Of a stretch of 64,000 bases of DNA, positions 8,217 through 32,752 are shown piece by piece (positions within the stretch are counted from its first letter, which is position 1; the number at the start of each line of letters is the position of its first letter). The notes below the pieces were generated by a model that saw only the letters and a list, made by a program, of their open reading frames with translations, made no database searches and was not told the DNA's origin. Made by a program: the position numbers and the translations under genes. Origin of the DNA: Octopus sinensis (lineage: Eukaryota); contig NC_043002.1 of assembly GCF_006345805.1 (NCBI RefSeq), positions 23,498,001-23,562,000 of the forward strand, written 5' to 3'.

Positions 8217-9371
8217 TCAGTGTATATCAGCAACCGTCTGCACCACTTCTGCTTCTTCTTTCGTCTCTGAGGATATACCAGTCATCGTCAGATAACCATC
8301 GGAGAAATTACTAGAAACAGACATCGGACAGGGAACCAATTCTCCGAAACGTGTGAAATCTACATTCCAGTGACCGTTTTTCTGATCAAACTGGTTGGCA
8401 TGAGCAAATCTGTATCCCCAGACAATCTCTTCAGCAATGTAGGACGTCTTCACTTGACACATTTCTCCGGTCGACTCGATCACGCCGTTAATCCATACAA
8501 TAAGTTCGATTTTCTTGACGAGCAGATCGTCCAGGTTAAGACAGAAGAAAGGGCTGGCATCCGTTATATAGTGCGTCAAAATAACCGGCCACATTAAAAA
8601 CACGTTACTGCCAACGTTGTTTATTTCAAAGTCCACTTTGACTTGATAGAGAGGATGAACGAAACCCTCGAGCGTCACGTACTCGGCGACCAGCATGCCA
8701 CCAACTTTAGCATTGATGAGGTGGGTATGTCGAAGATCGGCCACCTGAATTTGTAACACTGGATGCCCGTTCTCGTAACACAAACACGCTTTGTAGCTGA
8801 ACATCACCGTGTTTGAACGGTTCTTTGGACGAACCATCTTGGCGAATACAAACCCCAAGGAGATCGCTTCGAGAATAAAACCAATGAGGACTTGAAAGAA
8901 GAGCGTTGGAATCGTACTAACACAATCAGTGCTGGGGTACACGAACCCGTAGCCAATTGTGGTTTGAGTTTCAACAGAAAACAAGAAAAAATCTGCAAAC
9001 GTTTCCAGGTCTGGGAGGCAAGGTTTCGAATTAGAATTGTGCGAGTTGAAGTCGCCGTGTATGTAGGAGTTCAGCCACCAAATCACAGCAAATGCAGTAA
9101 AAGTGATAGCATGAGAGGAGAGGAAGACTAGAATAGCCCAATGCCATCGCATTTCAAGAATGGTGTTGTAATAATCTTCGATAAAACTGAAACGATGCCT
9201 TTCGAGGCCTTTCCGGTCGATAAGAGAATTTCCTGCTTTGGTGAGAAGAAAATGACCAGGATCTTCGTCTGTCTTTTCATTGATACAGTTTAAGTATTTA
9301 CAAAAATAATTCCATATTCCACTCAAAATGTAATTTCTGTTCGTCGGCGTGTCTGTGTTTTGGGTAACCAT
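8217..9371 (-). CDS. Inward-rectifier potassium channel, Kir7.1/KCNJ13-like, intronless CDS, 384 aa ('KirA')
   Basis: Slide helix and RWHW, M1, both conserved extracellular Cys, pore FSVETQTTIGYGFVYP, M2 FQ..IG..LEA..LG, KMVRPKNR tether, G-loop ESTGE.CQ.KTSY, EI.WGYRF. Complete uninterrupted ORF. Confidence 0.95.
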   Translation of the reverse strand: MVTQNTDTPTNRNYILSGIWNYFCKYLNCINEKTDEDPGHFLLTKAGNSLIDRKGLERHRFSFIEDYYNTILEMRWHWAILVFLSSHAITFTAFAVIWWLNSYIHGDFNSHNSNSKPCLPDLETFADFFLFSVETQTTIGYGFVYPSTDCVSTIPTLFFQVLIGFILEAISLGFVFAKMVRPKNRSNTVMFSYKACLCYENGHPVLQIQVADLRHTHLINAKVGGMLVAEYVTLEGFVHPLYQVKVDFEINNVGSNVFLMWPVILTHYITDASPFFCLNLDDLLVKKIELIVWINGVIESTGEMCQVKTSYIAEEIVWGYRFAHANQFDQKNGHWNVDFTRFGELVPCPMSVSSNFSDGYLTMTGISSETKEEAEVVQTVADIH

Positions 9372-12300
9372 TATTAAGACTCGAATTTGATGTCTATCAG
9401 TTCGTTATCTTGGGGCTTAGAGTTACTTTTAAAAAATGGAAGGGAAAAAAAAGTCAGCCGACACTTAATTTAGAGCAAGCACCATTTAAAATTCTTAATC
9501 GGAATGCGTGGTTTATAATTTCTACTGATAAATGGATTAAACGTAATCTAAAGATTAATAAAGAACCAAGAAAAAATAATGTTTGCTGGAGTTTTTTAAA
9601 CCTCAAATAATCATGTTCAATTTCCGATTAAATAAATAAATCTACTCTTTCCTCTCAAAAGATTTAATCAATACATACTACTAAAGCTATATGGTCGAGA
9701 TACTCACATAGCTGTCACAGTCGAATCCATTTAGTTGTAATTATGATATCACAAGGAGGTAGAGTCCATTGGACCGCCAACTTACAAATATCGCTTCCAT
9801 TTCCCATTCCCACCCACTCCCAAAACTATCACTGAAAATTTTTTTTGCATTCGTATAATTTTTCTTTCTTTGCTATGATGTTGGACAGGTTTTAAAAGTT
9901 TTAAATCATCTTAAACTTATCAAGCAAAGCGATTTGTCTTCCCCCTTTTCACGCTTCACAGCTCCATCCTCACCTCTATGAGAAATATTGGTATAGTCCA
10001 CCTGGGTAGTAGCAGTATCAATACGAAGTGTAAGGTTAAGAAGTTCATTTGTAATCACGTAGTTCCGGATTCGATCCTATCGGACGACAGCACCTTGGGC
10101 AAATGTCTTCTAGGTCGAATCAAGGTTTGTCAGTGCAGTTGGGTCGATGAAAACTGGATGCACTGCACTTGTTGGCCCATTGCCCAAAGCATTCAACCCA
10201 AGTCTACGATATGAGAATATCTTAATACATCGCTGTTTATGGCGACAATCTATGAGGAGTTGAGAAGTCAGGTGAAATATTTGAACAACATAGACAGATA
10301 CAGGTATACCAAATACCATAGAACATAAAATTTTGATTTATAAAAATTATCACCTCCTCTTGAGGATGTGTTATAATTACCAAACGGCATTTAAAGACCA
10401 TCCATCAAAAACAATCCCTTAATTACAAACTCAGGATAGAGATGGAAGGGGACATTGTCAGAAGCCGATCAAAGTAGATTTTCTCTTTCCCATGATTGTT
10501 TATCAGATCCACAGAATAATTTTGAACTCAGGAATGTGAAATAACGAATTTAACATAAACTTCTTTTTCCATATCACAATGGTCGATGGAGCAGATATTT
10601 ACTTCTGGTCTCCACGCCAGATAACTCTCTTCCAGAATGGGTCCTGGTATTTTTCCATAGGAAACATTGAACTGAATACTACAAATTTATACATCATTTG
10701 CCAGTTGCACAACAGTTCCAAGGTACCCACTTTAGGTATACAAATATGAGTAATCACCTGCAACATTTACAACAGAAGTAGCAGCTAAATTTACTCAAAT
10801 TACACCCTACCGTCTTTAGGAAAGGACACCGGATAAAGTAGTTCTAGATATACTGAAAAAAATGATCGACAAGGCTAAAATGTCTTTAACCATAGGTTTG
10901 CTTGATCAGGGCTAACCTGGGGCTAAACAATAACACGCATAGATGACAAAAATGTAACAGAAGTACACTAGAGTTCACGTAGATATCACACCGAACTAAC
11001 AGGGGAGCCTCTACGTATGCGCTTGACCTGACAATGTCTGAAGTAGAAGGCAGGAATGCTTTTCGTCATAGCTCTGTTTGATCAAGATTGATTTGGAGCT
11101 AAACAACAACAGGTACAGCATTTAGTCAATACAGAAACAACAGCATTAATGCAGACCAATATCTTAGATAAATCACAGAATTAAGCCTGTTCTACCTGGC
11201 TGTACCAATAACAAACTATGGTGAATACAGAGCAATATATTGTCTATCATCAGTGGAGGCTGTAAAACAAATCATGAACATAGAGAAATAAAAATACTTA
11301 AAATGAATGACCACTTATCTGGACATTCTGGGAGCAAAGTCTGTTGTATCAAGCTCCAAGACACCTCATGTTCAGTAACTCCACATATACGCTGACATGT
11401 CTACAATCCCATCAGAATACTATCCGTCCTATGCGATCCTAACCTTCTTAACCTCAAGCACCGTGTTGCGACGTACAAAAGCCCAGAGAAACAGGACATT
11501 CTTTTTTTTTTATGCTCTCACAAAGCTTGACTTCTTTCTGTCCGCTAACAAAACCCACTGGCTGAAAGATCGAGCTAGCGAAGAAGTTTATATGCAGTCT
11601 CTCGGATAGAGAAAGCACTCACAACAGCCTTCAAAATCACACCCTATCATCTTGAATAAAGAATACATTAGACAATGTAGTCTCTGGTATTCGTAAGAAA
11701 GACGCAGTAGTCAATCTGGAACATCTTTGATTTTATGTCTGCTTGATGGCTAACTCGGGGTTAAAAACAGCAGAACAAATGCAATATATCCATACAGTAC
11801 TTCTTTTCGCTAATCCATGGTCCTTAAGTATATTGGAAAAGCATGATCTGTGGATTGTACCCCACTGTTCGAGGAACTATCTATATGTCATGGGTCTTTT
11901 CGATGAGGAACCTGGAAGAACTAAACTACTTTAACCTCGGTGAAATGAGCCGTAAAAAGTTAGAGTTTTATACCTGAACATTGTGCAGTGCCGCTGATAG
12001 TGTACGAACCGATAACCTTTCGTTTCGATCCAAGAAATCAATAAATATAAGAGTATTTATAAAAATGGTCACTCAAGTTTAATTTAAAATGAAGGTCAAG
12101 AAGAAATTTCCTTCATCCAGTTTCCATCCCACACCATAAAACAATATAATTATAAGATAACATACGAGGGAACAAGTGCACAGCTATCAAAGGACGAGAT
12201 CTTGAAATCTTTACGATCAAATAAACGACACGGAAATAGTCGTAAATACTTCAGTTCATATCCACACCGGAAGTGGGAGTGTACTTTCGAACTTGAAACG

Positions 12301-12520
12301 TGCAGGTGTGCTCAAAAAATGGTTATGCCTCACACAAAACAGAATAAAGCCAAATTAAATTAAAATATAACGATTCACACATACAATACTCAACATGTTT
12401 CTGGAGATAGAAAAAAAAACACAGCTGGTAAAATAGGGGAAATATTTTAAGTGTTTTCTTCAACCACTAAGCCTTAAAATACACAACATAGACATTCGAT
12501 TTGAAAACTGAGGAACAATC
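9372..12520. promoter_or_regulatory. Intergenic region between the divergent Kir start codons; candidate shared or bidirectional regulatory region
   Basis: Gene orientation; ETS-type CCGGAAGT at 12267-12274 and TATA-like TATAAAA near 12058; acceptor-like tract upstream of the KirA ATG suggests a 5'UTR intron. TSSs not determinable. Confidence 0.35.
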
Positions 12521-13186
12521 ATGGAAAATATATCTATGAGGGAGAATTCAAAACGTCACGTTTACTGTGAATCTGAATCTGTGACTGAATCAGCAACAAA
12601 GGATAGAAAAAGGAGGCATTTATGTCACTATTTTTTCACACAATGTTTGAACTATTTTCGCAGAAGTCCCCTTCAACAAAAACGCAAGGCTCTAGTAAAC
12701 AAATCTGGTCAGTACAGCATTGACTACAGAGGACGGAAACCCATCTTCTTTATCAAGGATATCTATCTGACTTTGCTTGATCTCCAGTGGCGATGGGCAA
12801 TTCTTGCGTTTTTCATTATGTACTTTACGGTATTTATTTTTTTCACTCTCGCTTGGTTCGCTGTTTGCTGGATCAATGGCGATTTTATTCACTTGGGAGA
12901 TCCGAGTTACGAACCGTGTGTCAAAGGTATGACCAGCTTCGTAGGTTTACTTCTTTTCTCTATTGAGACACAGACTTCAATCGGGTACGGTTTCGTTCAT
13001 CCAAACACGTCCTGCGCCGGTTCCTTGGTCATTCTGTTTTTCCAAATAACAGTTGGACTCATCGCAGACACTTTTCTACTCACCTATATTGTATCCAAGT
13101 TTTTTCGACCTTCCAAACGGGCTAAAACAATTCGCTTCAGCGAAAATGCGGTGATTTGCCAAGAGGACGGCATTCTTTGTCTCCAG
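12521..13186 (+). CDS. Second Kir channel ('KirB') exon 1: N-terminus, M1, pore, M2
   Basis: LVNKSG, QWRW, FSIETQTSIGYGFVHP, FQITVGLIAD, KFFRPSKR; strong donor CAG|GTAAGT at 13187 (phase 0). Confidence 0.93.
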
Positions 13187-14513
13187 GTAAGTCTTTCAAT
13201 CCTATTTTATGAAATTCCACAACTTTTAGCCTTCAAACCATTTATTTTCCGCTTTTTAATCTTAAGAGAATCTATTACTTTCACTTTTTTATTTAACCTT
13301 AAACTAAGTTCTATAACACTTTTAAAATTTATGATATTATTTGAAGACGAAAAAGTGTATTACATTGTGTAATCTTATAAAGATTCATATTAAACAACTT
13401 AGCTTTCAGATAACGTACATCGAACCTTACAGATATCTTGTATCAGACCGTTTAGAAGCGTACGACAGAATTTCAACTATTGAACAAAATGGTATCCGTT
13501 GATGCAGCTCTGTTGCTCTCCGTCTAGCTGTTACATCTTGGACGTGCCGCTCTTATCCAATATCTCTTATTCAATATATCCCAATAAAGTGGATGGTGAC
13601 TTTCTACAGGGGAAAAGCCATATATATATACGAGCAAAACGCCCCCCGTCCAGTGGACGGTGCTAAGTTGTCGAACATTTAAACCAAATTTTCTCAAAAC
13701 AACTTGTCCAACCGTCCCATAGGCCTCCCCTTTGAGAAACACTGACTTAACCTAAATTTGGGACACCGTGCATTTTTCTCACGTACGCGTAGTATCGATC
13801 GCAACAGCTAATGTACTTGCGCGTACAAATGCACGTTCCCACGGCTTTATCGATCGCATTCTCACCTGGAATCGATTTTTGTAAGTTTTTCAAGACTTAT
13901 ACACGCCCTGATACCATCGGTATCTACATATCAAATTTGAGCACAATCGGATGGAGGATGCCCGAGATTCTAGAAGACACACACACACAGAATGGATTTT
14001 ATATAATAGATATATAACGTGTGTGTGTAGTGGTTCATGCAAGCATGGCGTGGCTTCGATCCTCGATAGCCAAATTTCACTTAACAGTTTCAACAGCACT
14101 TTTCTCACGGCAAAACAATAGTTTTTCTGTAAGTGATAGCAGTTACATTTACCAGAATAATGTATTTGCCACTTGACCCTTCTAACCTATTCTAGGCCAC
14201 CAAAAGCTAGAATAGAGATAACAGACCGCCAACAAAATTTATTGTTCTCAACAATATGTCTATCCTTCTGGTTGGTTTTGGATAGTTGCAAAAACAAGAA
14301 CTCCGTAAGCCAAAGCAGTTAGTGAGAACTCTTTGTTCGAGCTAGTTATTTGATTAGGAGTAAAATTTAAAATATCCCCCCTGATGTGGAAATAGTGTAG
14401 ATGGTGGTTACACTCCTATATGTGAGGGAGGAAAAGATAAACATTATACAGGTATCCTGAGACGCCCCACAAAACAGGCGAGGACAAACTCTAGCGATCT
14501 TAGTCCAAGCTAG

Positions 14514-14833
14514 TGTAGCCGGTCTGAACGGAAAAGAAGGAAAAAAACGAAAAATTATGAATTATAAATAGGAAAAAAAAACCGGCGGGTTGAACACAAA
14601 CCCAGAAAAACTATATATTATCATTTAATTTTTAGTTCATTTTAATTTGATTCATCATTTCGATTTCATTATACTCGATTTTTACCCCGACTAACTAATG
14701 CTAGTCCCTAAATGTTAGTTCCCAGTCCCTAAATGTTTTTGTTTTGTCCTTGTGCTTTCCCATCTATGTTAGCCATGTATTGGCAATAAAGAAATTGGTT
14801 AATGAGAGCCGAGTCTGGCTGACCGGCTGAACA
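14514..14833 (+). mobile_element. Possible solo LTR
   Basis: Starts TGTAGCCGGTC, ends GACCGGCTGAACA, AATAAA about 45 nt before the end; no TSD found. Confidence 0.3.
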
Positions 14834-15299
14834 AAACCCCAACTATGGTAACTCACCAACGAAGCAGTTGCTTCGTCCTACCACTCTCACTTTTCTCTGT
14901 AACATTACCATATCTCTCTATATAGTACTATGAGAATATGTACACACTTATCGGCCGATTCAACTTTTTTTACCTTGCATGTTTTTCCATTTACTAATTA
15001 TACATACCAACCCGTCGTGGTTTGGGACATATACAAAGTAACGATGAATATTTCTTTACAACTTCAATTACTGTTCTTCTTCCATCTTAGCATCTTAACA
15101 ACAAGAGAAAATTGTACAAGTAAAAATCTAGAAAGTAATTTTTGCCATAAATAAAAATCCATTGGTGGTAAAAGAATTGTAGGTTTAGATTCAATCAAAA
15201 TAAGGATGAATAATATCAGAAAACTAATAAAAAGAATTTATATTGAAGAAATTAGTTGCAAGGAAGCTCTGAAAGAGGAACTGTAGTGGTCTTGCTAGG

Positions 15300-16874
15300 T
15301 CTCTCTTACATACTTTTAGAAGGATTGCTGGGAATCCATCTGGCCGGCAAACTTCCATGAAAACTGAAGGAAGGTAAAATATGCCCTATTCATAAAGGAG
15401 GTAGCAGAGCGGAGGCCAAGAACTACAGACCTATTTCTCTGACCTCACACATCAGCAAGGTCATGGAACGAATATTCAGAAAGAAACTAATCACCTTCCT
15501 TGAAGAAAATGACTTGCTGCCTGACACCCAACATGGTTTCCGACCAGGAAGAAGCTGCTTAACTCAGCTCCTGCAACACTATGACTGGGTGCTGAAACGA
15601 CTGCTCAACCACTCAAATGTGGAAGTCATATATCTCGACTTTGCAAAGGCCTTTGATAAAGTCGATCATGGAATGTTATGTCACAAACTGCGTGATCTTG
15701 GCATTGTTGGAAAATTGGGAGAATGGCTTCATGACTTTCTGAAGGATAGAAGTCAGGTGGTAGTAGCCAATGGGGCCACTTCCGCTAACACGCAAATAGT
15801 AAGCGGTGTTCCGCAGGGCACTGTTTTGGGACCACTACTGTTCATAATGGCCCTCTTAGACATGCCCTCAGCCACCACGATCACAAGTTATGCAGATGAT
15901 ACAAAAGTTTCACAGGCAATACAGAACCCTGAAGACACTAAGCACCTGCAATGTGAGCTGGACAAAATATACAAGTGGGCTGAAAAGAATAGCATGCAGT
16001 TCAATGCTGAAAAGTTTCAAGCTCTATGCTATCAGCACGCAAAACTAAATGCAATACCCAATAAATACACTGGACCTGGAGGGACTGCAATCCCAGAGGC
16101 ACAATCAGTGCGAGACCTGGGTATTTACATGAGTGATGATGCAACCTTTCATGTGCATGTTGCTAAATTGGCAATGAAATGTAGGTGGCTGACCGGATGG
16201 ATTCTTAGAACCTTCAGAACAAGAGACCAAGAAACCATGATGGTCCTCTGGAGGACACTTGTCCTAAGCCACTTTGACTATTGCTTTCAGCTATGGTCAC
16301 CATCCAGTGTCAAGTTAATCACAGAACTTGAGGCGATCCAACGAAGCTACACGAAGAAGATAGCCTCTGTGCAGCATATAAGCTATTGGGAAAGACTCAA
16401 GAGATTGAGACTCTATTCTTTAGAGCGTAGGCGAGAAAGATATGCCATAACATACATCTGGAAGATCCTAGAAGGACTTGTCCCAAACTTTGGCATCGAT
16501 AGTTACATAAATGCCAGAACTGGGCGCCCCTGCATAGTACCAAGGACTCCAAATTTGCCATCAAGATATAGGACAAGATACTGTGATAGCCTGGACTTCC
16601 AGGCCCACAGCTCTTCAATATCCTCCCGAAGAACCTAAGAGACCTGCATGGGGTGGATGCATTGTCTTTAAAATGAAACTGGATCTCTTCTTGTCAAGTA
16701 TCCCAGATGAACTTCACGGCAGGAGGTGCAGATGAGGGCAGCTGAATCGAACTCTCTCATGCACCAAATGGCAGTTGCTAAAAAGCATTCGTGAAGTAAA
16801 ATCATGTAGCAACACCAAATGGCAGTGCCCCAGCATGGCCACAGCTTGCGAGCTGAAACTAGATAAAAAAAAAA
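15300..16874 (+). mobile_element. 5'-truncated CR1-type LINE (RT and C-terminal region, 3'UTR, A-rich tail) in KirB intron 1
   Basis: KNYRPISLTS..KVMERI, QHGFRPGRSC, YLDFAKAFDKV, SGVPQGTVLGPLLF, YADD, RDLG, LERRRER; upstream stop near 15358 and frameshift near 16607. Confidence 0.92.
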
Positions 16875-17541: not shown

Positions 17542-17767
17542 AACTGAAGGAAGGTCAAATATGCCCTATTCATAAAGGAGGTAGCAGAGCAGAGGCCAAG
17601 AACTACAGACCTATCTCTCTGACCTCACGCATCAGCAAGGTCATGGAACGAATAGTCAGAAGGAAACTAATCACCTTCCTTGAAGAAAATGATTTGCTGC
17701 CTGACACCCAACATGGTTTCCGACCAGGAAGAAGCTGCTTAACTCAGCTCCTGCAACACTATGACTG
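17542..17767 (+). mobile_element. Internal fragment of the same LINE
   Basis: Matches 15362-15587 with 7 mismatches in 226 nt (manual count). Confidence 0.93.
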
Positions 17768-19119: not shown

Positions 19120-19531
19120 GTTTGCTCTCTCTCTCTCTCTTTCTCGCAGGCGCTCTCTCCCTCTCTTTTTCGTTCTCTCTCGCTCTCTCTCTTTTCCTCT
19201 CTCTCTCCCTTTCTCGCGCGCGCTCTTTCTCTCCCTTTCTCGCGCGCGCTCTTTCTCTCCCTTTCTCGCGCGCGCTCTTTCTCTCCCTTTCTCGCGCGCG
19301 CTCTGTCACTCTCTCTCTCTTTGCCGCACGCTCTCTCTCTTTGCCGCACGCTCTCTCTCTTTGCCGCACGCTCTCTCTCGCTCTCGCGCTCTTTCTCTCT
19401 CTCTTGCGCGCTCTTTCTCTCTCTCACGTACTCGCTCTTTCTCTCTGTCTCTCGCTCGCGCGCGCTCTTTCTCTCTCTCGTGCGCGCTCTTTCTCTCTCT
19501 CTTGTGCGCTCTCTCGCTCTCTCTCTCGCTC
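19120..19531. repeat. (CT)n/(CG)n compound low-complexity tract directly upstream of KirB exon 2
   Basis: Sub-repeats ctttctctccctttctcgcgcgcgct and ttgccgcacgctctctctct (x3). Confidence 0.95.
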
Positions 19532-19600
19532 TTATGTTGCTCATTTCTACTCTCATTCTCCATCTTTGTTTTTATTTATTTATTCTTTTTTTTTGGAAAG

Positions 19601-19865
19601 GTCCGTATTGGAGACCTGCGTGGTAAATCACTGCAATCCGTTTCGGCCCATGGTGTACTGGTACTTGAATCAATAACTGACGAAGGCTCCGTATACCCTC
19701 TCTACCAGAATAAACTCTCCTTCACCGTTGACTGTATGCAGGGAGATATTTGTCTCTTGTGGCCAGTTTTGCTGACGCATCAAATCACAGAGTCCAGCCC
19801 TTTCTGGACCAGTGGTCCGTTGGACTTGGAAAAGGAACGATTTGAAATCATAATATTCCTCGAAG
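19601..19865 (+). CDS. KirB exon 2 (cytoplasmic domain)
   Basis: AG at 19599-19600; VRIGDLR..YPLYQ..LLWPVLLTHQITESSPF..FEIIIFLEG continues exon 1 in phase; donor G|GTAGGT at 19866 (phase 1). Confidence 0.92.
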
Positions 19866-20083: not shown

Positions 20084-20116
<33 letters not shown>

Positions 20117-22529: not shown

Positions 22530-22579
<50 letters not shown>

Positions 22580-24059: not shown

Positions 24060-24392
24060 TCATATGTCCATTTTCCATGCTAGCTGGGTTGGATGGTCTG
24101 GCAAGAGCTAAGAAAAGGCTAGGAGTTGCACCATCTCTCCACTGTTTTGGGATGGTTTCTACAGTTGAGAGTTGACCATGTGTACAAGGTTCGGTTCTCA
24201 ATCCCCTCATATTCATCATAGTTCTCCTAACCATAACAGAGGAATTCAAGACTGGTTGCCTGTGGAAACTGCTATATGCTAATGACCTTGCTCTCATAGC
24301 AGATTCTGTAACAGAACTAGAAAAGAAATTCCAGGTGTGGAAGCAAAACCTGGAATTGAATGGCCTTATGGTTTATTTAGCAAAGACCAAGG
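24060..24392. mobile_element. Rearranged RTE LINE fragments (3' tail on minus, RT fragment on plus)
   Basis: VQGSVLNPLIFIIVLLTITEEFKTGCLWKLLYANDLALIA parallels the RTE ORF at 52914-53411. Confidence 0.8.
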
Positions 24393-24559
24393 TTGATTTG
24401 TTGTTGTGGCCAAATATTTTACCATTAGGTAGTATGCCAATAGCCATATGTTAATTTCTTTCATGTGTGTTATATTTTATTTGGCATTGGATTGCTAAAT
24501 GACTGTTGCCATTGATAGAGAACTAGGCTATCCGGCATCCACACAAAGCTAGTGTTCAC

Positions 24560-25420
24560 AGAATTGACACCATTGACGAAAGTAATGTACACAGATGGAC
24601 ATAAAGCTTTAAAAATGGGAAAAAAACAATATTTAAAACCAAGTCATGCAGGAGATCATCAAGTGCTTCTACTTATACAAATCACCTGTGAGGGGATGAA
24701 TTGTTTGCACAAATGACTCAAAATCTGTGAGTTTACTGCATGACAGGACTGTGGTCACAATGCATTGCAGAAGATGGCAGAAGGCTATGGGTATCAAGAA
24801 ATGTGTGCAAAGAGAGTACCTTATCAGATGTCACCAAATTTGAAGGACACAGGAGAAAGTCTGTTTGAATCTGCTGGAAGCATTTGCAGTCAAGGATTTT
24901 TTTTCTTCTTCTTTAGATGAGTGAAATGCAGGTGTATTTTAAATCAACGCTCAAGCCATACAATTGTATCACATCTTTTCTCCAAATCCTAAAATGTTCA
25001 AGAGTAGCAATTGGCACAGAAAGTTCTGGGGACATAGTAAGGGTATCATTCTCCTCGATTTTTCTGAAACATAACTGTACTGTGAACAGTGAATAGTATA
25101 CAGAAATCACTCAAAGAACTTGGAGAAGCCATAGGGAGGAAGAGACCAAACAAGACAGAAAATGATCCACATTCACTAGGACAGTATGTGACATCTTTAG
25201 TAGTAAATCAAGCAATCAGCAAATTAGTTTGGTCAGGGGTCCTCCATCCACTACACAACTTAGATCTGGTATCCTCTGAACTTTCACCTATTCAGTTCAA
25301 TGAAGGACAGTCTTCAGAGGCAATGATCTGATTACACAGACATGAAAATGACTTTGAAGAAGTATGCACAGCAGTGCATACCTGAAGTTTTTCAAATAGA
25401 ATTAAAGGTTGAGATCAATG
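24560..25420 (+). mobile_element. Highly decayed mariner-type transposase relic
   Basis: Residual GY..CAKRVP (WVP-like) and HPLHNLDLVSSE (HPPYSPDLAPSD-like) motifs. Confidence 0.5.
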
Positions 25421-25993
25421 ATGGTACAAATGCATTGCTTATGGTTGGAGACTGTTGAACAGTACTATCGTATAGTGGAAGAATTACAATACCATTATGT
25501 GCAATTTGAACAACCTATGCCTGTTAAAGTTCTGCCCACTTCTGCATTACTTTCAGGCAACACTTATACATTCACATGTGTATGTGTTCATATGTGCAGT
25601 ATGGCCAAATGGTTAAGTTTACTTCATATTTGAGTTTGAGTTCAATCCCATTGCATGGCATTTAGGACAAATGTCATTTTCTATGGCCTCAAGACAACCC
25701 ATAACTTGTAAGTGAAACTAGGTAGGCAGAAACTGTATAGAAACTCATCAGGTGATTCAAAAAGTGTAGCCTTGTCACAGACTGTCAAGTTGATTCTGTG
25801 TGATAATTTCATTAAGTTTACACCTGTCTGTGGAATACTCAGCCACTTACATGTTAATCCAGTTGATCAAACTCAATCCTTGTTGAACAAAAATTGTGTT
25901 TCTGTATGTGATTTTGAATTCTGAAAAAAATATTTTAAGCAGTAAAGTACCCAGTGTCTTATTTCTTCCTCTCTCATTTGTATTTTCTGCTAG

Positions 25994-26197
25994 GTTTTAT
26001 TGAGACAACAGGAGAACTGTGTCAAGCCAGAACATCATACTGCCAAAATGAAATCTTTTGGGGTTACCGTTTCCAGCAAATTCTTCAATTTCATGAGTCA
26101 ATTAAGCGTTGGTGTGTCAATTTTAAAGACTTTGATAAAATAATTGAAACTCCAGTACCAGAGATGAGTGCCAAACATATAACAGCCATATGCACAG
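25994..26197 (+). CDS. KirB exon 3 (G-loop to end of Kir domain)
   Basis: Acceptor tattttctgctAG at 25992-25993; G-FIETTGELCQARTSYCQNEIFWGYRF..VNFKDF; donor AG|GTTAAA at 26198, or in-frame stop at 26200-26202 if not spliced. Confidence 0.92.
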
Positions 26198-26407
26198 GTT
26201 AAATGCTTTCACATCAATTTTAAAATTACTTGGTTTTTATTATTTATATTTTTATTTGTTAACCTTTGTATTCAGCTGACATCCTTCTTATACATTACAT
26301 CTGCCTGTACCAATGTCATCTTCCTCAGTCTACCTCTTCCACAGATCCTGTCAACTCAAGAACTTGACCCTTCTTTACATAATTGACATCATGCCCATAC
26401 CATTGAA

Positions 26408-26652
26408 CTCTCAGTATTTCCGATTCCTCTTAGATCCATTTTTCCCTCCACTCTCTCTCTCAGTATTTCCGATTCCTCTTAAATCCATTTTTCTCTCATC
26501 TCTCTCTCTCAGTATTTCTGATTTTCCTCTTAAATCCATTTTTCCCTCATCTCTCTCTCTCAGTATTTTCGATTCCTCTTAAATCCATTTTTCCTTCAGC
26601 TCTCTCTCTCTCTCAGTATTTCTGATTCCTCTTAAATCAGTTTTTCCCTCAG
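26408..26652. repeat. Pyrimidine-rich minisatellite, about 5 units of 49-53 nt
   Basis: cagtattt recurs at about 26412, 26461, 26510, 26561, 26614. Confidence 0.92.
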
Positions 26653-26729
26653 TTACTTGTACTCCACCATTCATACACATTAGTATTGCACACCCATCAT
26701 ATTTCTTCCCAGTCTTCACCAATGTTCCA

Positions 26730-27110
26730 CATTCAGGAACAGCATCTCTCTACAATGCAGCATTCTACTCCATTCACAAACATTATACAGTCTATTCTCC
26801 CCTCAGTAAGGCAAACTTATTGCCATAATCCAAGATACATTTTTATTCGTGCAACAGTACTTTTAGATCACCCAGCAACATCTGGTAATTAGGTCACCTC
26901 AGTAACAAAAACTATCAGCTATTCTTAAGGAATCATCTGAACATTTGAAAGAATTTCTCACATCTTGGTAACTTTTCCTGTACATATGCCACATACAAAG
27001 TCCATCTTCTTGGCATTCGTACCCACTTCTTTTTCATGCTCACTAAAACTTCCGTCTTTATTAGGTTTACTTTGAGGCCACTCAATTCTGGGTTTTGCTC
27101 TCAAAATTTG
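26730..27110 (-). mobile_element. Old RTE LINE fragment
   Basis: GLKVNLIKT, CGICTG, IADSFCY motifs parallel the 52 kb RTE. Confidence 0.55.
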
Positions 27111-28109
27111 AAATTATTTTCTCAAGACCTTTGGCAGATCTGAAACAATTTGAACAATTATCCTTAGAACCAGTCCTTGCACTCCCATCATTAAAACTTC
27201 TATATTTACTTGATGGACCCATCAACTCTTCACTTACAATCCAAGTAACTAAATCACTTACAGAGAAAGGTTCATATGGTCAGCCAGTCTTAATCTTGTT
27301 TGTAATGGCCTGGAGGATTATCATCAACAGGAGACTGAGCCCTCACGAACACTAAACTATAAACAAAATCTGTGCTGAACTCATTTCTAGTTCTCACCTT
27401 GCTGACAACACTATTGTACATGGCTTACATGGCTCTCATAAACTTTCATCTCCTAGTTTTCTTCCTAACCACCAGACTACAGAGCATGGAATCCTATGAA
27501 AGGCCTTCACTGAGTCGATGAGTGCTAAGAGTTAGAAGCTTTTCTTCCAGATCAGTTTCCCTATAACTCTTTCAGTAGCTTACATAACCTAATTTGATAT
27601 CTGTAGCTGCCTTTAGTGCACCTCCTTTGCTTGTATACCTGTCAGTACCATCATAAGGCACAGAGATACTGGGTGATTTGCCCAACGCCACATGGGTCTA
27701 GGGGCCCAATCCTGATCTATAAATACTAAAGTTTGCTGTCAGTAAATAAAATAAGGCCCAATGCATTCATTTGCCAGAGGGCCTATAATGTTAACATGGC
27801 CCTAGTCCTAGTTGACGATACAGCTACATTTGTCATGGGTATGACAACTCCCTGTATTTCTAACTAACCAGCAAATGACCTACTCCATTAGTTAACCCTG
27901 AGACTCCAGCTCCTGTTCCTACCAGGATATCCTTAACTATGCTTTCATCTATACAGCTGTCAACTTCCAAGATTGAACCCTCTGTCGGGTTTCCTAGGAG
28001 TAACCATTCTTTCCTATACATTTTCCTCAGTAGTAACAATTTCAAGCCTCTGTCTTTGGGAAATCAGTGATGGCAACTGTGTAGCAGTTCTTCTGTAATT
28101 ACTTCTCAA

Positions 28110-28522
28110 GCATTTGTCTTATGAAGAAAGGCTGAAGACGCTTGACCTTTATTCTCTAGAAAAACAACAATGCTGTAATGATCTCATTCTTGCTCACATC
28201 ATAAGCGGAAAGTCTAACCTCTTGAAAGAGCTGTTCTTCACTCCTGCTTCAGAGCGTCGGCTGCGGAGTCACTCCGAAAAGCTCTATCTGTGACGATTTC
28301 ATCTCAATCGAAGGAGAGGGGCTTTCTCCGTCCGGGTTGCGGATCCGTGGAATAAGCTGCTGGACGAGATAGTGAAGATGCCGACGACCGCTCGGTTCAA
28401 AGTCTCTCTTGACCAGAAATGGCCTAAACTCTTTGCATGAACACCCTCCCTGTACATAACTCCATGTCCCCCTACATGGCCTTGCTTTTTGAGCCAAAAA
28501 CTTAACTAACTTAACTTAACTT
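28110..28522 (+). mobile_element. 3' end of a second CR1-type LINE with (TAACT)n tail
   Basis: EERLKTLDLYSLEK..LRSHSEKL..FSVRVADPWNKL..FKVSLD, then cttaactaacttaacttaact. Confidence 0.8.
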
Positions 28523-29153
28523 CTCTCAAATGTGAATGTAGGCACATACCATACTCACAATGACACATTCACTTACACACAAATACATACTCACACACAT
28601 GTGCATTCTCACATATACATGCCATGTGTATATGAACACATATACACATGCATTCATCATGTGCACACCTACACACATTCACATGCACTCACACACGTAC
28701 ACTCATGTATGCTCATATACATGTGCATATATGCTCATACTGATATGCAGACACATAAAACCTTACACACATACTTATGTCCATTCATTCACATGCATTC
28801 TATCAACATTCAGACATTCACATACACATTGGAGAGAATAATAAAACACATACACATCAGACAATAGCTACAAGCCAACTTCTATATGGTCATTTAACCT
28901 GCTAGAAATAGCAGCCAAATCCCCTTCCAATTACACCTTTATCATCTAATAGAAAGTGCTCCTTATACAAGGCAGATCTAGATATACAATGTCTGAATAA
29001 AAAGATGACACTTACAGTTTGGACATCTTTTGATCATAGGTTTGTTGAATCAGGCAAACCTGGAATCAAACAACAACATTTTTCTATTTCATTTTTAAAT
29101 AACCAAAATGTCTCTTTCTTGGCTTCAACAAGTTGTAATTAATTTTCTTCCAG

Positions 29154-29325
29154 GTAAAGACGTTTTGGAAAATCCTCATTTTTCAACATCATTTCCTGGA
29201 GAATTCTCAGAGCAAAACCTGAAAGTCTTTGAGTCCATGTCAGTGATGAGCTCTCCTGGGAACCAGGCAAGAACCTATGCTGAAACACAAGACTTGGGCA
29301 ATCAACCAGAAATTCATGAACGAAG
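29154..29325 (+). CDS. KirB putative exon 4 (non-conserved C-terminal tail)
   Basis: Acceptor aattttcttccAG at 29152-29153, phase 1 matches exon 3; open frame GKDVLENP..IHER; donor AAG|GTAAAT at 29326. Confidence 0.6.
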
Positions 29326-31914
29326 GTAAATTACGTTGGTTTTGTGTGTGTGCGTTTTAATGAATGATTAGATTTTCAGTTGAAAACAGAAAAAGAAAAT
29401 CTATACATATAAAGCTGATCATCATCATCATTGTTCGACCGTGGTCGAGACAATGGAATTTACCATGCTACGCCAGACTTCACGTTCCATCATGGCATTA
29501 CGGAGGTCCTGTTGCTGGATGCCTTTATCCCTGGAGATTACATCAGGGTAGGAGAGTGTGCGCCCTCTGGTATTGTGAGTAGATGGCTTCCAGAGGAGAA
29601 GAGTAGAAATGACCTCTTTTTCTGCTCTACAACAATGTCCAGCAAACTGGACTCTCCTACCTTTCACAAGAGATGACACAGGTGGTAGTTACCCATATAT
29701 ATAAAGCTGAAGTTGTCTGTGTGTGTGTGTGTGGAAGGTTTGGTAGCCTTCAACTAACACTATCTCCTCCGAGACCCTGCGGCACAAGTTGACCAAACTT
29801 GAGAGTATGACAGAAGAAGGCTTCCTCTTCATTCCGTAGAAGAAAAAATTCAAATCAGACCATGTTAAGACCAAAAATTATTTACATCAAAAAGGTGCTT
29901 TTTCTTCTATGAAAATCCCTATTTTTTACGATTTTTTGACTGTTGTGTTGCTATTTTTTGGTGCATTTCAACCAGAAAAATGTTCACTAAAAGAGAATAA
30001 CAAGCTACATAATGCAAAATTTTTACTTTTCAAAAAAGATGGAAACTATGTCAAAACTTTGTTAACGCGACATCAAAGTCTGCCGTTTTAAGCGCAACTA
30101 AAAAACAAACCCAAGCAATGCCGGGCTATACTGCTAGTTGTCATTATTAACAAAAAAATATTAACTATATATGTACAGGCATGGCTGTGTGGTTAAGAAG
30201 CCTGCTTTCCCACCACGTTCTTTTGGGTTCAGTCCCACTTCACTGTACCTTGGGCAAGTATCTTCTACCATAGCCCCAGGCTGACCAAAGCCTTGTGAAC
30301 AAATCTAGATGGAAACTTTGTGGATGCCCTGTGTGTCCGTCTCCATTTATCCCCCTCCCTCACCACTTGGCAACTAAAGTTTGTCCACGTGACTTAGCAC
30401 AGTTCAAAAAAACAAAGTTATAAAAAGCAAAATGTATTGGGGGTCAATGTGTTTGACTAAAACCCTTTCAAGGCAATGCCCCAGCAAGACTGCTGTCTAA
30501 TGACCAGTCAAAGATGAAACCTAAAAATATAAACATTTTGCAATTTTATGCTGTTTTAGCAACACATCAAAGTGATACGAAAATAAAATAAAAAGCCAAA
30601 TAAAAAGACTATGTTTAGTTCCTGTTTCTACAGCTACGTACTTTGTGTGTGACAGAGTACTGAAGAGTTCCTGGCTTTGGGTAAAAGAAAGTACAGGAGG
30701 ATCAGTTAATTATGATTTTATACAACATATTCCCCTCTCAGATTCATGCACACATTGCAGCAGTCCTTCAGTTTTTCTAAGCCCTGTAAAAGAACTTGGA
30801 AGGTTGGGTCTCCAGTCAGGCCTTTCATGATACTCTTAAAGCCAAGAACTTTTCAGCCCCCCTTCGTATATACAATGTGTGTGTGTGTGTGTGTGTTGTG
30901 ATAAACTGACTGGATTGTCACAGCAGGAACATTCTCTATGGTATTTTCTGTTATAGCAGTTATCTTTTAGACTGTGGCCATACTGGGGCACCACCATCAA
31001 GAATTTAGTCAAACACGTCAACCCCTGTACTTATTTTTTTTTTTATTTAAGTCTGGTACTTTGTTACAGGGACATAAACACACAACACCAACTGTCAAGC
31101 AATGGTGGGGGGACAAACACATACTCTGGTACAATGCTCCCCCTTTATTTTCCATCTTCCAAATCTTCCCATAAGTCTTTAGTTGACCCAAGGTTATAGC
31201 AGAAGACACTTGCCCAATGGGTCAAACAGTGAGACTAAAACGATGTGGTTGGGGTGCACCTACACAGCCACACTTAATGAAATGTAAGCAAAATTAAGAT
31301 ATGTCCTGAATCGTTTCAAATTGTAACTAGGCATGGCCGTGTAGTTAAAAAGCTCATTTTGCAACCAAGTGGTTTGGGGTTCAATCCTATTGTGCGGCAC
31401 CTTGAACTAGTTTCTTCTGCTAAAGCCCTGGGCCAACCAATGCTAAAGAGTGGATGGATTTTGCAGACAATTCTGTGTTGAAGCCCACTGTGTATGTTTG
31501 CATACATGCACGTATGTATGTGTGTGCATACATGCACATATGTATGTATATATGTGTGAGTGTTCATGTTTGTCCCCCACTGTATGACAACTGATGTTGG
31601 TTGTTTAAGGCCCCATAATTTAGTGGTTGGGCAAAAAGAGGCCCGGCAGAATAAGTGTCTGATCAATAATAATTCCCGAGTTGATTTGTTATAGTAAACC
31701 CTTCAAGGCTGTACCCCAGCATGATCACAGTACTGAAATAAGTAAAATATTAAACAAAAATGATATCTTAAATATAACCAAAAAAAAAAAATGTTATTAA
31801 CAAAAATGCAGTATCCAACTATGAAAATTATCACATCTTTCAGAGAATATTGTTTCCACACACACACAAAGCCAATGGGGTAGAGATTCCTGGCATGGTG
31901 TTTGTGAAACACGT

Positions 31915-32076
31915 CAGAGGTAATAATGTAAATTTTAAATAAGGTTTAACGGCAAAGAAGCACTGGAAAGTATTTTTTTCAAGCTGTAGCAACTGACGTT
32001 GCTACAGCTTGAAAAAAATACTTTCCAGTGCTTCTTTGCCGTTAAACCTTATTTAAAATTTACATTATTACCTCTG
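31915..32076. repeat. Perfect 79-bp inverted repeat with 4-nt loop
   Basis: 31915-31993 is the exact reverse complement of 31998-32076; loop TGAC. Confidence 0.97.
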
Positions 32077-32489
32077 CAGCCAGCCACACTTGTGCCTGTG
32101 TGGTTGAGGAGCTTCGTTCTCAGTTATGTGGTCTTGAGTTCAGTCCCACTGTGGCATTGAGCAAATGTCTTCTACTACAGCACTGAGCCAACCAAAGCCC
32201 TGTGAGTAAATTTGTTGGATGGAAACTGAAAAAATGTGTGTGTGTATGTGATCGTTTATATTTGTGTTTCTCCAATAATTGCTGAACTACAAGCAGTGGC
32301 ATTGTTATTTCCCCGATCAATGCATCCTCTGCTGACATTGCACTTTCAATGTGTGAGTTAAAAGATCCTTTATTAAAAATAAAGGTTAAGTTTAGCAGCA
32401 GGAAGGACACCTGGTCACAAAATAATACCTCGAAGTCTGACCATTGAAAAAAACACATAAAACAAACGAATGCATATAATCACTCTTAA

Positions 32490-32710
32490 CCCTTTAGTGT
32501 TCAGAATATTCTGTTAAATGTAATACTTTTTCACTCAAATTGTTTTGAATTAATCATGCATTATCTTATAGCTTTGAGGTTTCAATGATGTGATTGTTTA
32601 TTTTCAGAATGGCATTGTAAGTTAGGAGTGAGAGGCTAGATATGGCCAGTTTGAATATAAAACATGTAGAATATATTGGGCCAGATATGGCTGGTTTAAA
32701 CACTAAAGGG
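32490..32710. mobile_element. piggyBac-type MITE
   Basis: TTAA at 32486-32489 and 32711-32714; perfect 12-bp TIR CCCTTTAGTGTT/AACACTAAAGGG. Confidence 0.85.
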
Positions 32711-32739
32711 TTAACAGTCATACAATTTATTTTCAACAG

Positions 32740-32752
32740 GTTCTCGATATAA
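32740..32752 (+). CDS. KirB putative terminal coding exon (..RRFSI*)
   Basis: Acceptor tttattttcaacAG at 32738-32739; phase 2 from exon 4 gives R-F-S-I-stop; total CDS 666+265+204+172+13=1320 nt. Confidence 0.45.

What the first reader, a model, noticed from the sequence alone, without database searches (positions are those of the whole stretch)
8217..32752. Head-to-head pair of diverged Kir7.1-like channels: candidate co-regulated heteromeric channel
Seen: start codons are 3.15 kb apart in divergent orientation. The proteins share only 32 of 75 residues across pore/M2 (manual count) but have the same unusual GYGFV(Y/H)P turret and TGE.CQ G-loop, pointing to an old local inverted duplication. 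Established: Kir channels are tetramers, several need heteromer partners, and vertebrate Kir genes also occur as divergent neighbours (KCNJ9/KCNJ10, KCNJ1/KCNJ5). Inference: these may be co-expressed subunits of one atypical channel.
Basis: partly seen in the sequence, partly recalled or inferred. Interest (0 to 1): 0.72.

Follow-up and report, generated by a model that had tools for sequence, protein, structure and literature searches.

The report
Head-to-head octopus Kir channel gene pair
Two diverged inward-rectifier potassium-channel genes face away from each other 3 kb apart in an octopus genome. They belong to a mollusc-only branch of the family that independently acquired the odd pore of human Kir7.1. 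The same kind of gene pair exists in a limpet, an apple snail and a mussel, but nothing yet shows that the two proteins work together.

Summary
Gene A (8217-9371, minus strand, intronless, 384 aa) and gene B (12521-32752, plus strand, five coding exons, 439 aa) are intact Kir genes whose start codons lie 3,150 bp apart on opposite strands. They are 38% identical and share GYGFV(Y/H)P and TGE(M/L)CQ.

Both fall in a clade of 28 mollusc Kirs with 100% bootstrap support. Every member has four Kir7.1 hallmark states:
- a hydrophobic residue in place of the pore arginine
- proline at GYG+4
- glutamate in the G-loop
- an acidic residue in M2

Vertebrate Kir7.1 itself groups with Kir4.1 (100% bootstrap; the alternative costs 29 lnL). 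The resemblance is therefore convergent, not orthology.

Head-to-head pairs of clade members also occur in a second cephalopod (17.6 kb apart), Patella (4.5 kb), Pomacea and Sinanodonta (about 60 kb). Whether these descend from one ancestral pair is unresolved, because the four lineages form a near-polytomy.

The "co-regulated heteromer" idea is untested.

Verdict: a real and ancient paralogue pair, a new member of known kinds, of moderate interest.

The parts
8217..9371 (-). Kir gene A: intronless CDS, 384 aa
   Evidence: ORF; Pfam IRK and IRK_C; 100% match to a protein on assembly GCA_006345805.1; orthologues in Argonauta at 65% identity and a second cephalopod at 57%.
8934..8954 (-). Gene A selectivity-filter exit, GYGFVYP. 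V144 replaces the pore Arg (Kir2.1 R148, Kir7.1 M125) and P146 corresponds to Kir7.1 P127.
8454..8477 (-). Gene A G-loop, ESTGEMCQ. E303 corresponds to Kir7.1 E280.
   Evidence: bioRxiv 10.1101/2024.06.07.597981
9372..12520 (.). Divergent intergenic region of 3,149 bp between the two start codons; the candidate shared regulatory region.
   Evidence: Unique within the window, GC 37%, no CpG island, no detectable similarity to the upstream DNA of Argonauta or of the second cephalopod. Transcription start sites are unknown.
12521..13186 (+). Kir gene B coding exon 1: N-terminus, M1, pore and M2. It ends at ...LCLQ with a phase-0 GTAAGT donor.
   Evidence: The same intron site and phase occur in Pomacea P0076 and in the second cephalopod.
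12983..13003 (+). Gene B selectivity-filter exit, GYGFVHP (V159, P161). The filter itself reads SIGYG, with S153 in place of Thr.
19601..19865 (+). Gene B coding exon 2: VRIGDLR...FLEG, ending in phase 1 inside the Gly codon.
25994..26197 (+). Gene B coding exon 3: contains the G-loop ETTGELCQ at 26002-26025. The donor lies just before an in-frame stop codon.
29154..29325 (+). Gene B coding exon 4: the C-terminal tail.
   Evidence: tblastn with the P0030 tail, 100% identity; splice reconstruction.
32740..32752 (+). Gene B coding exon 5: 13 nt encoding (R)FSI and the stop codon.
   Evidence: The C-terminus ERR(F/L)S(I/M) is conserved in the second cephalopod protein P0029.

Best explanation
These are two intact, anciently diverged paralogous inward-rectifier K+ channel genes in an octopus genome. 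They are arranged 5'-to-5', as expected from an old inverted ('palindromic') local duplication.

Both belong to a Kir subfamily whose named members are all molluscs. Every member of that subfamily has four residue states:
- a hydrophobic residue in place of the pore-loop arginine that follows GYG
- proline at GYG+4
- a glutamate lining the cytoplasmic G-loop
- an acidic residue at the M2 rectification site

These are the hallmark residues of vertebrate Kir7.1. The mollusc subfamily acquired or retained them independently of Kir7.1.

Inferred mechanism: each protein forms PIP2-dependent, K+-selective tetramers that behave like Kir7.1. That means very small unitary conductance, low Ba2+ and external-K+ sensitivity, and conduction through a Glu-lined G-loop. 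A (M2 Glu; Asn at the Kir2.1 E299 site) is predicted to rectify more weakly than B (M2 Asp; Glu at that site).

Shown here: gene structures, orientation, clade membership, the residue census, and the presence of similar head-to-head pairs in other molluscs.

Inferred only: the channel properties. Whether A and B co-assemble or share regulation is left open. I put regular heteromer formation at about 0.2.
For: - Gene models and domains.
- The A and B orthologues, their orientation and B's exon structure are conserved in a second cephalopod, with starts 17,569 bp apart.
- NJ tree (227 Kirs, 322 columns, 200 bootstraps): the 28 mollusc sequences, including A and B, form a clade with 100% support.
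- Site census, given as mollusc clade / Kir7.1 / other Kirs:
  - Kir2.1-R148 site: non-basic in 28/28; Met in 9/9; Arg or Lys in 187/190.
  - Pro at GYG+4: 28/28; 9/9; 23/190.
  - G-loop Glu: 28/28; 7/9; not among the six commonest residues listed for the 190 others.
  - M2 site: acidic in 27/28 (Glu 26, Asp 1); Glu in 9/9; Glu in 16/190.
- Conserved Kir features in both proteins: the pore-helix Glu, the extracellular Cys pair, the RP(K/S)xR linker, and the pair equivalent to Kir2.1 E303-R312.
- Literature: Kir7.1 M125R raises conductance about 20-fold and Arg occupies this site in other Kirs (PMC3254186). The pore-lining G-loop Glu280 is described as unique to Kir7.1 (10.1101/2024.06.07.597981).
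- Head-to-head pairs of clade members elsewhere: Patella caerulea, 4.5 kb, both intronless; Pomacea; Sinanodonta, about 60 kb.
- The duplication is old: third-codon-position identity between A and B is 0.13-0.33 in nine of ten 15-codon blocks and 0.53 in one.
- B's orthologue P0029 occurs as 1.6-2.2 kb contigs that encode the full spliced protein, so it is transcribed.
Against: - No functional or expression data were obtainable. All channel properties are extrapolated from Kir7.1 mutagenesis and structures.
- In cephalopods only, B carries substitutions at two nearly invariant sites: filter Thr to Ser, and the lower M2 Gly to Thr (187/190 other Kirs have Gly). It may therefore not work as an ordinary homomer.
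- ML cannot assign A and B one-to-one to the two gastropod/bivalve groups. The pairs may have arisen more than once, which weakens the argument for long-term constraint on the arrangement.
- No partner gene lies within 10 kb upstream of the gene A orthologue's start in Argonauta, or within 10 kb on either side of the group II gene in Haliotis.
- The trees use my own NJ and ML code (a Gonnet-derived matrix with four gamma rate classes), with constrained groups and limited taxon sampling.
Confidence: 0.75

Rival explanations
1. A and B are co-expressed from a shared divergent promoter or enhancer region and co-assemble into one heteromeric, atypical channel. B would act as a specialised partner subunit, by analogy with Kir5.1 or Kir3.1.
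For: - The two start codons face away from each other only 3.15 kb apart. Coding starts in Patella are 4.5 kb apart and annotated gene ends in Pomacea are 1.3 kb apart.
- Orientation is kept in a second cephalopod and in a mussel, despite spacers of 17.6 and about 60 kb.
- Cephalopod B has lost two nearly invariant residues, T142S and G177T in Kir2.1 numbering, as might a subunit that depends on a partner.
- At 38% identity the pair is about as diverged as the known partners Kir4.1 and Kir5.1 (that comparison is from my own knowledge).
- Orthologues of A and B were recovered on similar numbers of assembly contigs, 75 and 69.
Against: - There are no expression, transcription-start or interaction data.
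- No non-coding sequence is detectably conserved between the intergenic region and the corresponding DNA of Argonauta or the second cephalopod.
- There is no CpG island or other promoter signature.
- The published vertebrate head-to-head Kir pairs are described as mutually exclusively expressed (PMC1999503) and are not heteromer partners.
- No partner gene lies within 10 kb upstream of the gene A orthologue's start in Argonauta, or within 10 kb on either side of the group II gene in Haliotis.
Confidence: 0.2
2. A and B are true orthologues (co-orthologues) of vertebrate KCNJ13/Kir7.1, so the shared pore and G-loop residues are inherited rather than convergent.
For: - Four hallmark sites are shared.
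- 'RPKNR' is identical in A and in Kir7.1.
- In outgroup-rooted ML, the mollusc clade and the Kir4/7 clade both fall outside the Kir2/3/5/6 plus generic-invertebrate group (RELL 0.92). A sister relation to the whole Kir1/4/7 group is therefore not excluded.
Against: - Kir7.1 from nine vertebrates, including lamprey, groups with Kir4.1 at 100% bootstrap and ML RELL 0.998. The best Kir7.1-plus-mollusc topology is 29.3 lnL worse.
- Kir4.1 has the canonical Arg, no Pro at GYG+4 and no G-loop Glu.
- PMC1999503 suggests that KCNJ13 would be the fourth ATP-regulated-type partner (paired with KCNJ3) in the set of pairs multiplied by the two rounds of vertebrate genome duplication.
- Against solved structures, A and B score lower against Kir7.1 (180 and 175 bits) than against Kir6.2, Kir4.1, Kir3.2 or Kir2.2 (202-255 bits).
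Confidence: 0.04
3. The octopus pair is the mollusc counterpart of the chordate 'palindromic' pair of an ATP-regulated-type Kir (Kir1/4/7) and a GIRK. In this view A is Kir4-like and B is GIRK-like, and the arrangement dates to the bilaterian ancestor.
For: - The orientation is the same as KCNJ10/KCNJ9, KCNJ1/KCNJ5 and KCNJ15/KCNJ6.
- B's best solved-structure match is Kir3.2 (255 bits), and NCBI names it GIRK3-like.
- A's best matches are Kir6.2 and Kir4.1, and its Argonauta orthologue is named KCNJ10-like.
Against: - A and B share one clade with 100% bootstrap support that excludes all vertebrate Kirs, and they share four derived or unusual sites.
- ML topologies joining the clade to the Kir2/3/5/6 group are at least 17.8 lnL worse than the best topology.
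- B's phase-1 intron lies in the Gly of FLEG, six codons upstream of the GIRK-specific phase-1 intron (G307 of GIRK1).
Confidence: 0.03
4. The cephalopod pair A/B and the gastropod/bivalve pair (group I and group II) arose by separate inverted duplications. Head-to-head duplication would then be recurrent in this family, rather than one arrangement conserved for more than 500 million years.
For: - ML over all 15 arrangements of A, B, I, II and the outgroup: topologies with A and B as sisters sum to RELL 0.45, while the one-to-one orthology topologies reach only 0.007 and 0.012.
- Profile HMMs of groups I and II score A and B alike: group II scores 18-27 bits higher than group I for all five cephalopod proteins.
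- Only the cephalopod A and B proteins share the 'GYGFV' filter exit.
Against: - All 15 topologies lie within 6 lnL of each other, so the result is a near-polytomy.
- A few sites link A with group I: loss of Glu at the Kir2.1 E299 site, a C-terminal Cys, and an N-terminal His.
- Two or more independent head-to-head duplications of the same gene is less parsimonious than one ancestral pair.
Confidence: 0.45

Closest known systems
Vertebrate Kir7.1 (KCNJ13)
   Same: - A hydrophobic residue in place of the pore-loop Arg (M125 in Kir7.1; V144 in A, V159 in B).
- Pro at GYG+4.
- A Glu lining the G-loop (E280 in Kir7.1; E303 in A, E318 in B).
- An acidic residue at the M2 rectification site: Glu in A, as in Kir7.1; Asp in B.
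- The RPKNR linker, in A.
- The pair equivalent to E276-R285.

   Different: - Not orthologous: Kir7.1 groups with Kir4.1, and the mollusc genes form their own clade.
- Overall similarity to Kir7.1 is lower than to Kir2, Kir3, Kir4 or Kir6.
- A and B keep the long loop around 'EG..YPLYQ' that is shortened in Kir7.1.
- The function of the mollusc proteins is untested.
Vertebrate 'palindromic' Kir gene pairs KCNJ10/KCNJ9, KCNJ1/KCNJ5 and KCNJ15/KCNJ6 (Tanaka-Kunishima et al. 2007, PMC1999503)
   Same: Two Kir paralogues lie 5'-to-5' on opposite strands, from an ancient inverted duplication, and are kept linked over long evolutionary times.
   Different: - The vertebrate partners belong to two distant subfamilies (GIRK versus ATP-regulated type) and lie 10-450 kb apart. 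The octopus partners belong to one mollusc clade and lie 3 kb apart.
- It is a separate duplication event.
- The vertebrate pairs are reported to be expressed in mutually exclusive cell types.
Gastropod and bivalve group I / group II Kir pairs, for example Patella caerulea SNE40_002601 / SNE40_002600 (uncharacterised, automatically annotated)
   Same: Same clade, same four signature residues and same head-to-head orientation. The spacing is 4.5 kb in Patella; annotated gene ends are 1.3 kb apart in Pomacea; about 60 kb in Sinanodonta.
   Different: One-to-one orthology with A and B is not resolved. Both Patella genes are intronless and both Pomacea genes are multi-exon, whereas in octopus only B has introns.
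Obligate or preferential Kir heteromers (Kir4.1/Kir5.1, Kir3.1/Kir3.2 or Kir3.4)
   Same: A comparable level of divergence between partners. One member (B) carries changes at otherwise invariant pore and M2 positions.
   Different: There is no evidence here for co-expression or co-assembly. From my own knowledge, the genes of the known heteromer partners are not neighbours.

Membership tests
Inward-rectifier K+ channel (Kir/IRK) family | The IRK transmembrane domain (M1, pore helix, M2) followed by the IRK_C cytoplasmic domain. | tested here: met
   Pfam: A matches PF01007 at 3.9e-40 and PF17655 at 4.4e-45. B exon 1 matches PF01007 at 7.8e-34. The annotated B product carries both domains. Full-length matches to solved Kir structures at E = 1e-61 to 1e-75.
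Inward-rectifier K+ channel (Kir/IRK) family | The T-x-G-Y-G selectivity filter, the pore-helix Glu and the conserved extracellular Cys pair. | tested here: met
   A has TIGYG and B has SIGYG. The Glu at Kir2.1 E138 and the Cys at C122/C154 are present in both.
Inward-rectifier K+ channel (Kir/IRK) family | Arg after GYG-x (Kir2.1 R148), forming the pore salt bridge. | tested here: not met
   Val in both A and B. Of 190 other Kirs, 187 have Arg or Lys. Kir7.1 is the known exception.
Kir7.1 / KCNJ13 subfamily | The signature residues: non-basic at GYG+2, Pro at GYG+4, a Glu lining the G-loop, and Glu in M2. | tested here: met
   In B the M2 residue is Asp rather than Glu.
Kir7.1 / KCNJ13 subfamily | Phylogenetic grouping with KCNJ13 orthologues. 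| tested here: not met
   NJ gives Kir7.1+Kir4.1 at 100%. In ML, Kir7.1+Kir4.1 has RELL 0.998 and Kir7.1 plus the mollusc clade is 29.3 lnL worse.
Kir7.1 / KCNJ13 subfamily | Very low unitary conductance (about 50 fS), and weak dependence on Ba2+ and external K+. | not testable with these tools
   Needs electrophysiology. The property is described in PMC3254186.
GIRK / Kir3 (the NCBI name given to gene B) | Grouping with Kir3 sequences, and the GIRK-specific phase-1 intron in the G-loop Gly codon. | tested here: not met
   B lies in the mollusc clade, not with hKir3.2. Its phase-1 intron lies six codons upstream of the GIRK site.
'Palindromic' (anti-tandem) Kir gene pair, in the sense of PMC1999503 | Two Kir paralogues with their 5' ends facing each other on opposite strands, closely linked. 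| tested here: met
   Start codons at 9371 (-) and 12521 (+). The same orientation occurs in four other mollusc genomes.
Bidirectional-promoter gene pair | Transcription start sites less than about 1 kb apart on opposite strands, with correlated expression. | not testable with these tools
   No transcription-start or expression data. The start codons are 3.15 kb apart. There is no CpG island and no conserved non-coding block.
Heteromeric Kir channel | Co-expression in the same cells and physical co-assembly with altered properties. | not testable with these tools
   None obtainable here.

The most novel reading that the evidence does not exclude
The head-to-head pair is a single regulatory and functional unit that has been kept since the ancestor of cephalopods, gastropods and bivalves (more than 500 million years). 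Its two products would be obligate partner subunits of a Kir7.1-like, Glu-gated, ultra-low-conductance K+ channel. That would make this the first Kir heteromer whose partner genes are physically coupled, and a natural convergent replicate of the Kir7.1 pore.
Probability: 0.12. Interest if true: 0.65.

Novelty: new member of a known kind. Interest (0 to 1): 0.38.

Why it matters
- The glutamate-lined G-loop has been described as unique to Kir7.1, and the Met at the pore-arginine site as its exception among Kir channels. A whole mollusc subfamily has both features, acquired or retained independently. It is a natural replicate for testing how these residues set conductance and gating.
- Head-to-head duplication of Kir genes, already proposed to have shaped the vertebrate family, also occurred in molluscs, and the arrangement has been kept in very different genomes. 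This makes the question of shared regulation testable in a second phylum.
- The automatic names are misleading. "GIRK3-like" for B and "KCNJ10-like" for the Argonauta orthologue of A do not reflect where these genes fall in the family.
- The heteromer idea can be tested by simple oocyte co-expression.

Tried and rejected
1. Kir7.1 orthology: rejected by NJ and ML.
2. GIRK membership of B, and homology of the pair with the chordate GIRK / ATP-regulated pairs: rejected by clade support, ML, and intron position.
3. Assigning A and B to gastropod/bivalve groups I and II, using the BLAST score matrix, profile HMMs with leave-one-out controls, and a 15-topology ML test with RELL: no resolution.
4. 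Recent gene conversion between A and B: none, because third-codon-position identity is near random.
5. Conserved non-coding elements or repeats in the 3.1-kb spacer: none against Argonauta, the second cephalopod or the rest of the window, and no CpG island.
6. Finding the partner gene near the Argonauta gene A orthologue and the Haliotis group II gene: nothing within the 10 kb that could be fetched. Bradybaena P0004 also has no neighbour within 10 kb.
7. Flanking-gene synteny between octopus and Patella or Pomacea: none. The AdoMet_MTase neighbour is shared only with Argonauta.
8. Literature on mollusc or cephalopod Kir channels of this type: nothing found.
9. The look-up of P0039 failed.
10. 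Structure prediction was not run, because full-length sequence matches to solved Kir structures already settle the fold.

Full report
**What is in the window**

The window matches assembly GCA_006345805.1, record CM016864.1, near 23.5 Mb. I recall this assembly as Octopus sinensis. A 99%-identical partial protein is named Octopus vulgaris by NCBI.

Gene A is a single ORF at 8217-9371 on the minus strand. It encodes 384 aa with both Kir Pfam domains, IRK at 3.9e-40 and IRK_C at 4.4e-45.

A tblastn search with protein A finds only three further Kir-like segments in the window, all on the plus strand. These are exons of gene B.

- Canonical GT/AG junctions join 12521-13186, 19601-19865 and 25994-26197.
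- The tail of the O. vulgaris protein P0030 shows that exon 3 is spliced just before an in-frame stop, to 29154-29325 and then to a 13-nt exon at 32740-32752.
- The product is 439 aa, the length annotated on the source assembly.
- The same exon boundaries, and the C-terminus ERR(F/L)S(I/M), recur in a distant cephalopod.

The finding's coordinates therefore run exactly from stop codon to stop codon.

**Checking the observation**

- The start codons at 9371 (-) and 12521 (+) are 3,150 bp apart and divergent.
- A and B are 38% identical over 330 aa.
- Across pore and M2 I count 33 of 75 identical residues, and 30-34 in neighbouring windows.
- A has GYGFVYP and ESTGEMCQ. B has GYGFVHP and ETTGELCQ.

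All parts of the observation hold.

**Relatives**

Protein searches found orthologues of A in Argonauta hians (65% identity) and in an unnamed, more distant cephalopod (P0003, 57%). An orthologue of B (P0029) in that distant cephalopod aligns at 58-64% identity.

On an ENA contig of a related species, the A orthologue starts at 264,165 on the minus strand and the B orthologue at 281,734 on the plus strand. They are head-to-head, 17,569 bp apart. The A copy on that contig needs two frame changes. These are probably assembly indels, because the transcript-derived P0003 is intact.

An exhaustive profile search with the A orthologues found much stronger matches in other molluscs than in anything else: Solemya, Patella, Lottia, Pomacea and Sinanodonta.

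**A mollusc Kir clade with a Kir7.1-type pore**

A motif scan of all retrieved Kirs showed that a non-Arg residue after GYG-x, a following (Y/H/W)-P, and TGE(I/L/M)xQ occur together only in a set of mollusc proteins.

An NJ tree of 227 Kirs (322 columns, 200 bootstraps) places these 28 proteins, including A and B, in one clade with 100% support.

The table gives a site census in Kir2.1 numbering.

| Site | Mollusc clade (28) | Kir7.1 (9 vertebrates) | Other Kirs (190) |
|---|---|---|---|
| R148 | non-basic in 28 | Met in 9 | Arg or Lys in 187 |
| Pro at GYG+4 | 28 | 9 | 23 |
| G-loop Glu (aligns with Kir7.1 E280) | 28 | 7 | not among the six commonest residues listed |
| M2 site (D172) | Glu 26, Asp 1 | Glu in 9 | Glu in 16 |

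Each was then verified against chains in the Protein Data Bank before use.

The literature treats these residues as Kir7.1 peculiarities:
- A pore-lining G-loop glutamate is called a unique feature of Kir7.1 (10.1101/2024.06.07.597981).

**Is the clade related to Kir7.1?**

No. KCNJ13 from nine vertebrates, including lamprey, groups with Kir4.1 at 100% bootstrap.

I ran an ML comparison of all 15 arrangements of Kir7.1, Kir4, the mollusc clade, other vertebrate Kirs and other invertebrate Kirs. It used my own code with a Gonnet-derived rate matrix and four gamma rate classes, on 320 sites.
- Kir7.1+Kir4 has summed RELL 0.998.
- The best topology joining Kir7.1 to the mollusc clade is 29.3 lnL worse.

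With KirBac1.1 and KirBac3.1 as outgroup, the Kir2/3/5/6 plus generic-invertebrate group separates from (Kir4/7, mollusc clade, outgroup) with RELL 0.92. The relation between the mollusc clade and Kir4/7 stays open.

KirBacs read GYGDMHP and GYGKLIP. A hydrophobic residue plus Pro is therefore the general K+-channel state. Whether the mollusc clade retained it or reverted to it cannot be decided here.

Against solved structures, both octopus proteins score lower against Kir7.1 (180 and 175 bits) than against Kir6.2, Kir4.1, Kir3.2 or Kir2.2.

**The head-to-head arrangement elsewhere**

Non-cephalopod clade members fall into two groups, I and II. Leave-one-out profile scores separate them by 50-180 bits.

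| Species | Arrangement | Spacing |
|---|---|---|
| Patella caerulea | group II gene (SNE40_002600, minus) and group I gene (SNE40_002601, plus); both intronless | 4.5 kb between starts |
| Pomacea canaliculata | group II-like gene (minus) upstream of the group I gene P0076 (plus); a third Kir nearby | annotated gene ends 1.3 kb apart |
| Sinanodonta woodiana | P0077 (minus) and P0078 (plus), divergent; the pair seems duplicated as a unit | about 60 kb |

No partner was found within 10 kb upstream of the gene A orthologue's start in Argonauta, within 10 kb on either side of the group II gene in Haliotis, or within 10 kb of Bradybaena P0004.

**Do all these pairs share one origin?**

This is unresolved.
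- BLAST scores and profile HMMs place A and B equally far from groups I and II.
- ML over the 15 arrangements of A, B, I, II and the outgroup (351 sites) gives a near-polytomy, with all topologies within 6 lnL.
- Topologies with A and B as sisters sum to RELL 0.45. The two one-to-one orthology topologies reach 0.007 and 0.012.
- A few sites link A with group I.
- B's first intron (phase 0, LCLQ|VRIGD) is shared in position and phase with the Pomacea group I gene P0076.

Third-codon-position identity between A and B is 0.13-0.33 in nine of ten 15-codon blocks and 0.53 in one. The duplication is therefore old, and there has been no recent gene conversion.

**Predicted function (inference)**

Both proteins keep the following:
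- the filter
- the pore-helix Glu
- the extracellular Cys pair
- the basic linker (RPKNR in A, RPSKR in B)
- the pair equivalent to Kir2.1 E303-R312

A has Glu in M2 and Asn at the Kir2.1 E299 site. B has Asp in M2 and Glu at that site. A should therefore rectify more weakly than B.

By analogy with Kir7.1, I expect very small unitary conductance and a Glu-lined G-loop constriction.

Cephalopod B alone has Ser for the filter Thr, and Thr for the lower M2 Gly. This fits a specialised or partner-dependent subunit, but it proves nothing.

**Co-regulation and heteromers**

The 3,149-bp spacer is unique within the window and has no CpG island. It has no detectable similarity to the corresponding DNA of Argonauta or of the second cephalopod. 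Transcription start sites and expression data could not be reached.

The vertebrate precedent was published in 2007. PMC1999503 lists KCNJ1/5, KCNJ10/9 and KCNJ15/6 as palindromic pairs, infers an inverted duplication in an ancestral chordate, and argues that expression of the partners "must be mutually exclusive" (GIRKs in neurons and heart; their partners in epithelia and glia). The precedent therefore supports the idea that head-to-head Kir pairs persist. It does not support the idea that the partners co-assemble.

**Verdict**

This is a real, intact and ancient head-to-head pair of Kir paralogues from a mollusc-specific subfamily that mimics the Kir7.1 pore. It is a new member of two known kinds: Kir channels with an Arg-less pore, and palindromic Kir gene pairs. 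The heteromer model remains an open, testable guess, at about 0.2.

Noticed in passing
window 15463-16638 (+): A 391-aa ORF matching reverse transcriptase (RVT_1, 8.6e-23) lies inside intron 1 of Kir gene B, on the same strand. It is a retroelement insertion.
   Followed up: partly
window 887-1729: A (GAGT)n microsatellite of about 213 copies. It explains the GC skew of 0.52 in the first 2 kb.
   Followed up: no
window 19125-19532 and 26408-26651: A (CT)n / 26-mer low-complexity tract lies directly 5' of B exon 2 and yields spurious long ORFs on both strands. A 49/100-bp tandem repeat lies just 3' of B exon 3.
   Followed up: no
window 47251-48105 (-): An intronless 284-aa ORF with two RNA-recognition motifs (RRM_1, 2.5e-35). 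It may be a retrogene or a single-exon RNA-binding protein gene.
   Followed up: partly
window 52914-53411 (-) and 59177-59581 (-): A further reverse-transcriptase fragment (RVT_1, 9.4e-19) and a weak hAT-dimerisation hit. These are transposon remnants.
   Followed up: no
window about 1-836 (+), inferred from L004 18536-21155: The gene downstream of Kir gene A encodes an AdoMet_MTase (PF07757) protein. The same neighbour follows the A orthologue in Argonauta (L002 13392-21161), so this local synteny is conserved within octopods.
   Followed up: partly
L005 13780 / 25697 (Bradybaena similaris P0004): This group I mollusc Kir has a phase-1 intron inside the G-loop Gly codon (TVEST|GEMCQ). PMC1999503 describes that site and phase as exclusive to vertebrate and tunicate GIRK genes (G307 of GIRK1). 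The intron is either much older than thought or was gained in parallel.
   Followed up: partly
L001 about 9500-10645 (ENA contig ctg122473l): The gene A orthologue on this contig needs two frame changes to be read through. This is either an assembly indel artefact or a pseudogene in that species. The related transcript-derived protein P0003 is intact.
   Followed up: partly
L008 and L009 (Sinanodonta woodiana CM100994.1, 42.95 Mb and 47.73 Mb): The identical group I Kir protein is encoded at two places 4.8 Mb apart, and the group II partner also has two near-identical copies (locus tags 011644 and 011740). The pair seems to have been duplicated as a unit, or the assembly retains a haplotype copy.
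   Followed up: no
L010 1-555 (+) (Pomacea canaliculata): A third Kir gene (439-aa product) lies just upstream of the head-to-head pair, so Pomacea has a cluster of three.
   Followed up: no
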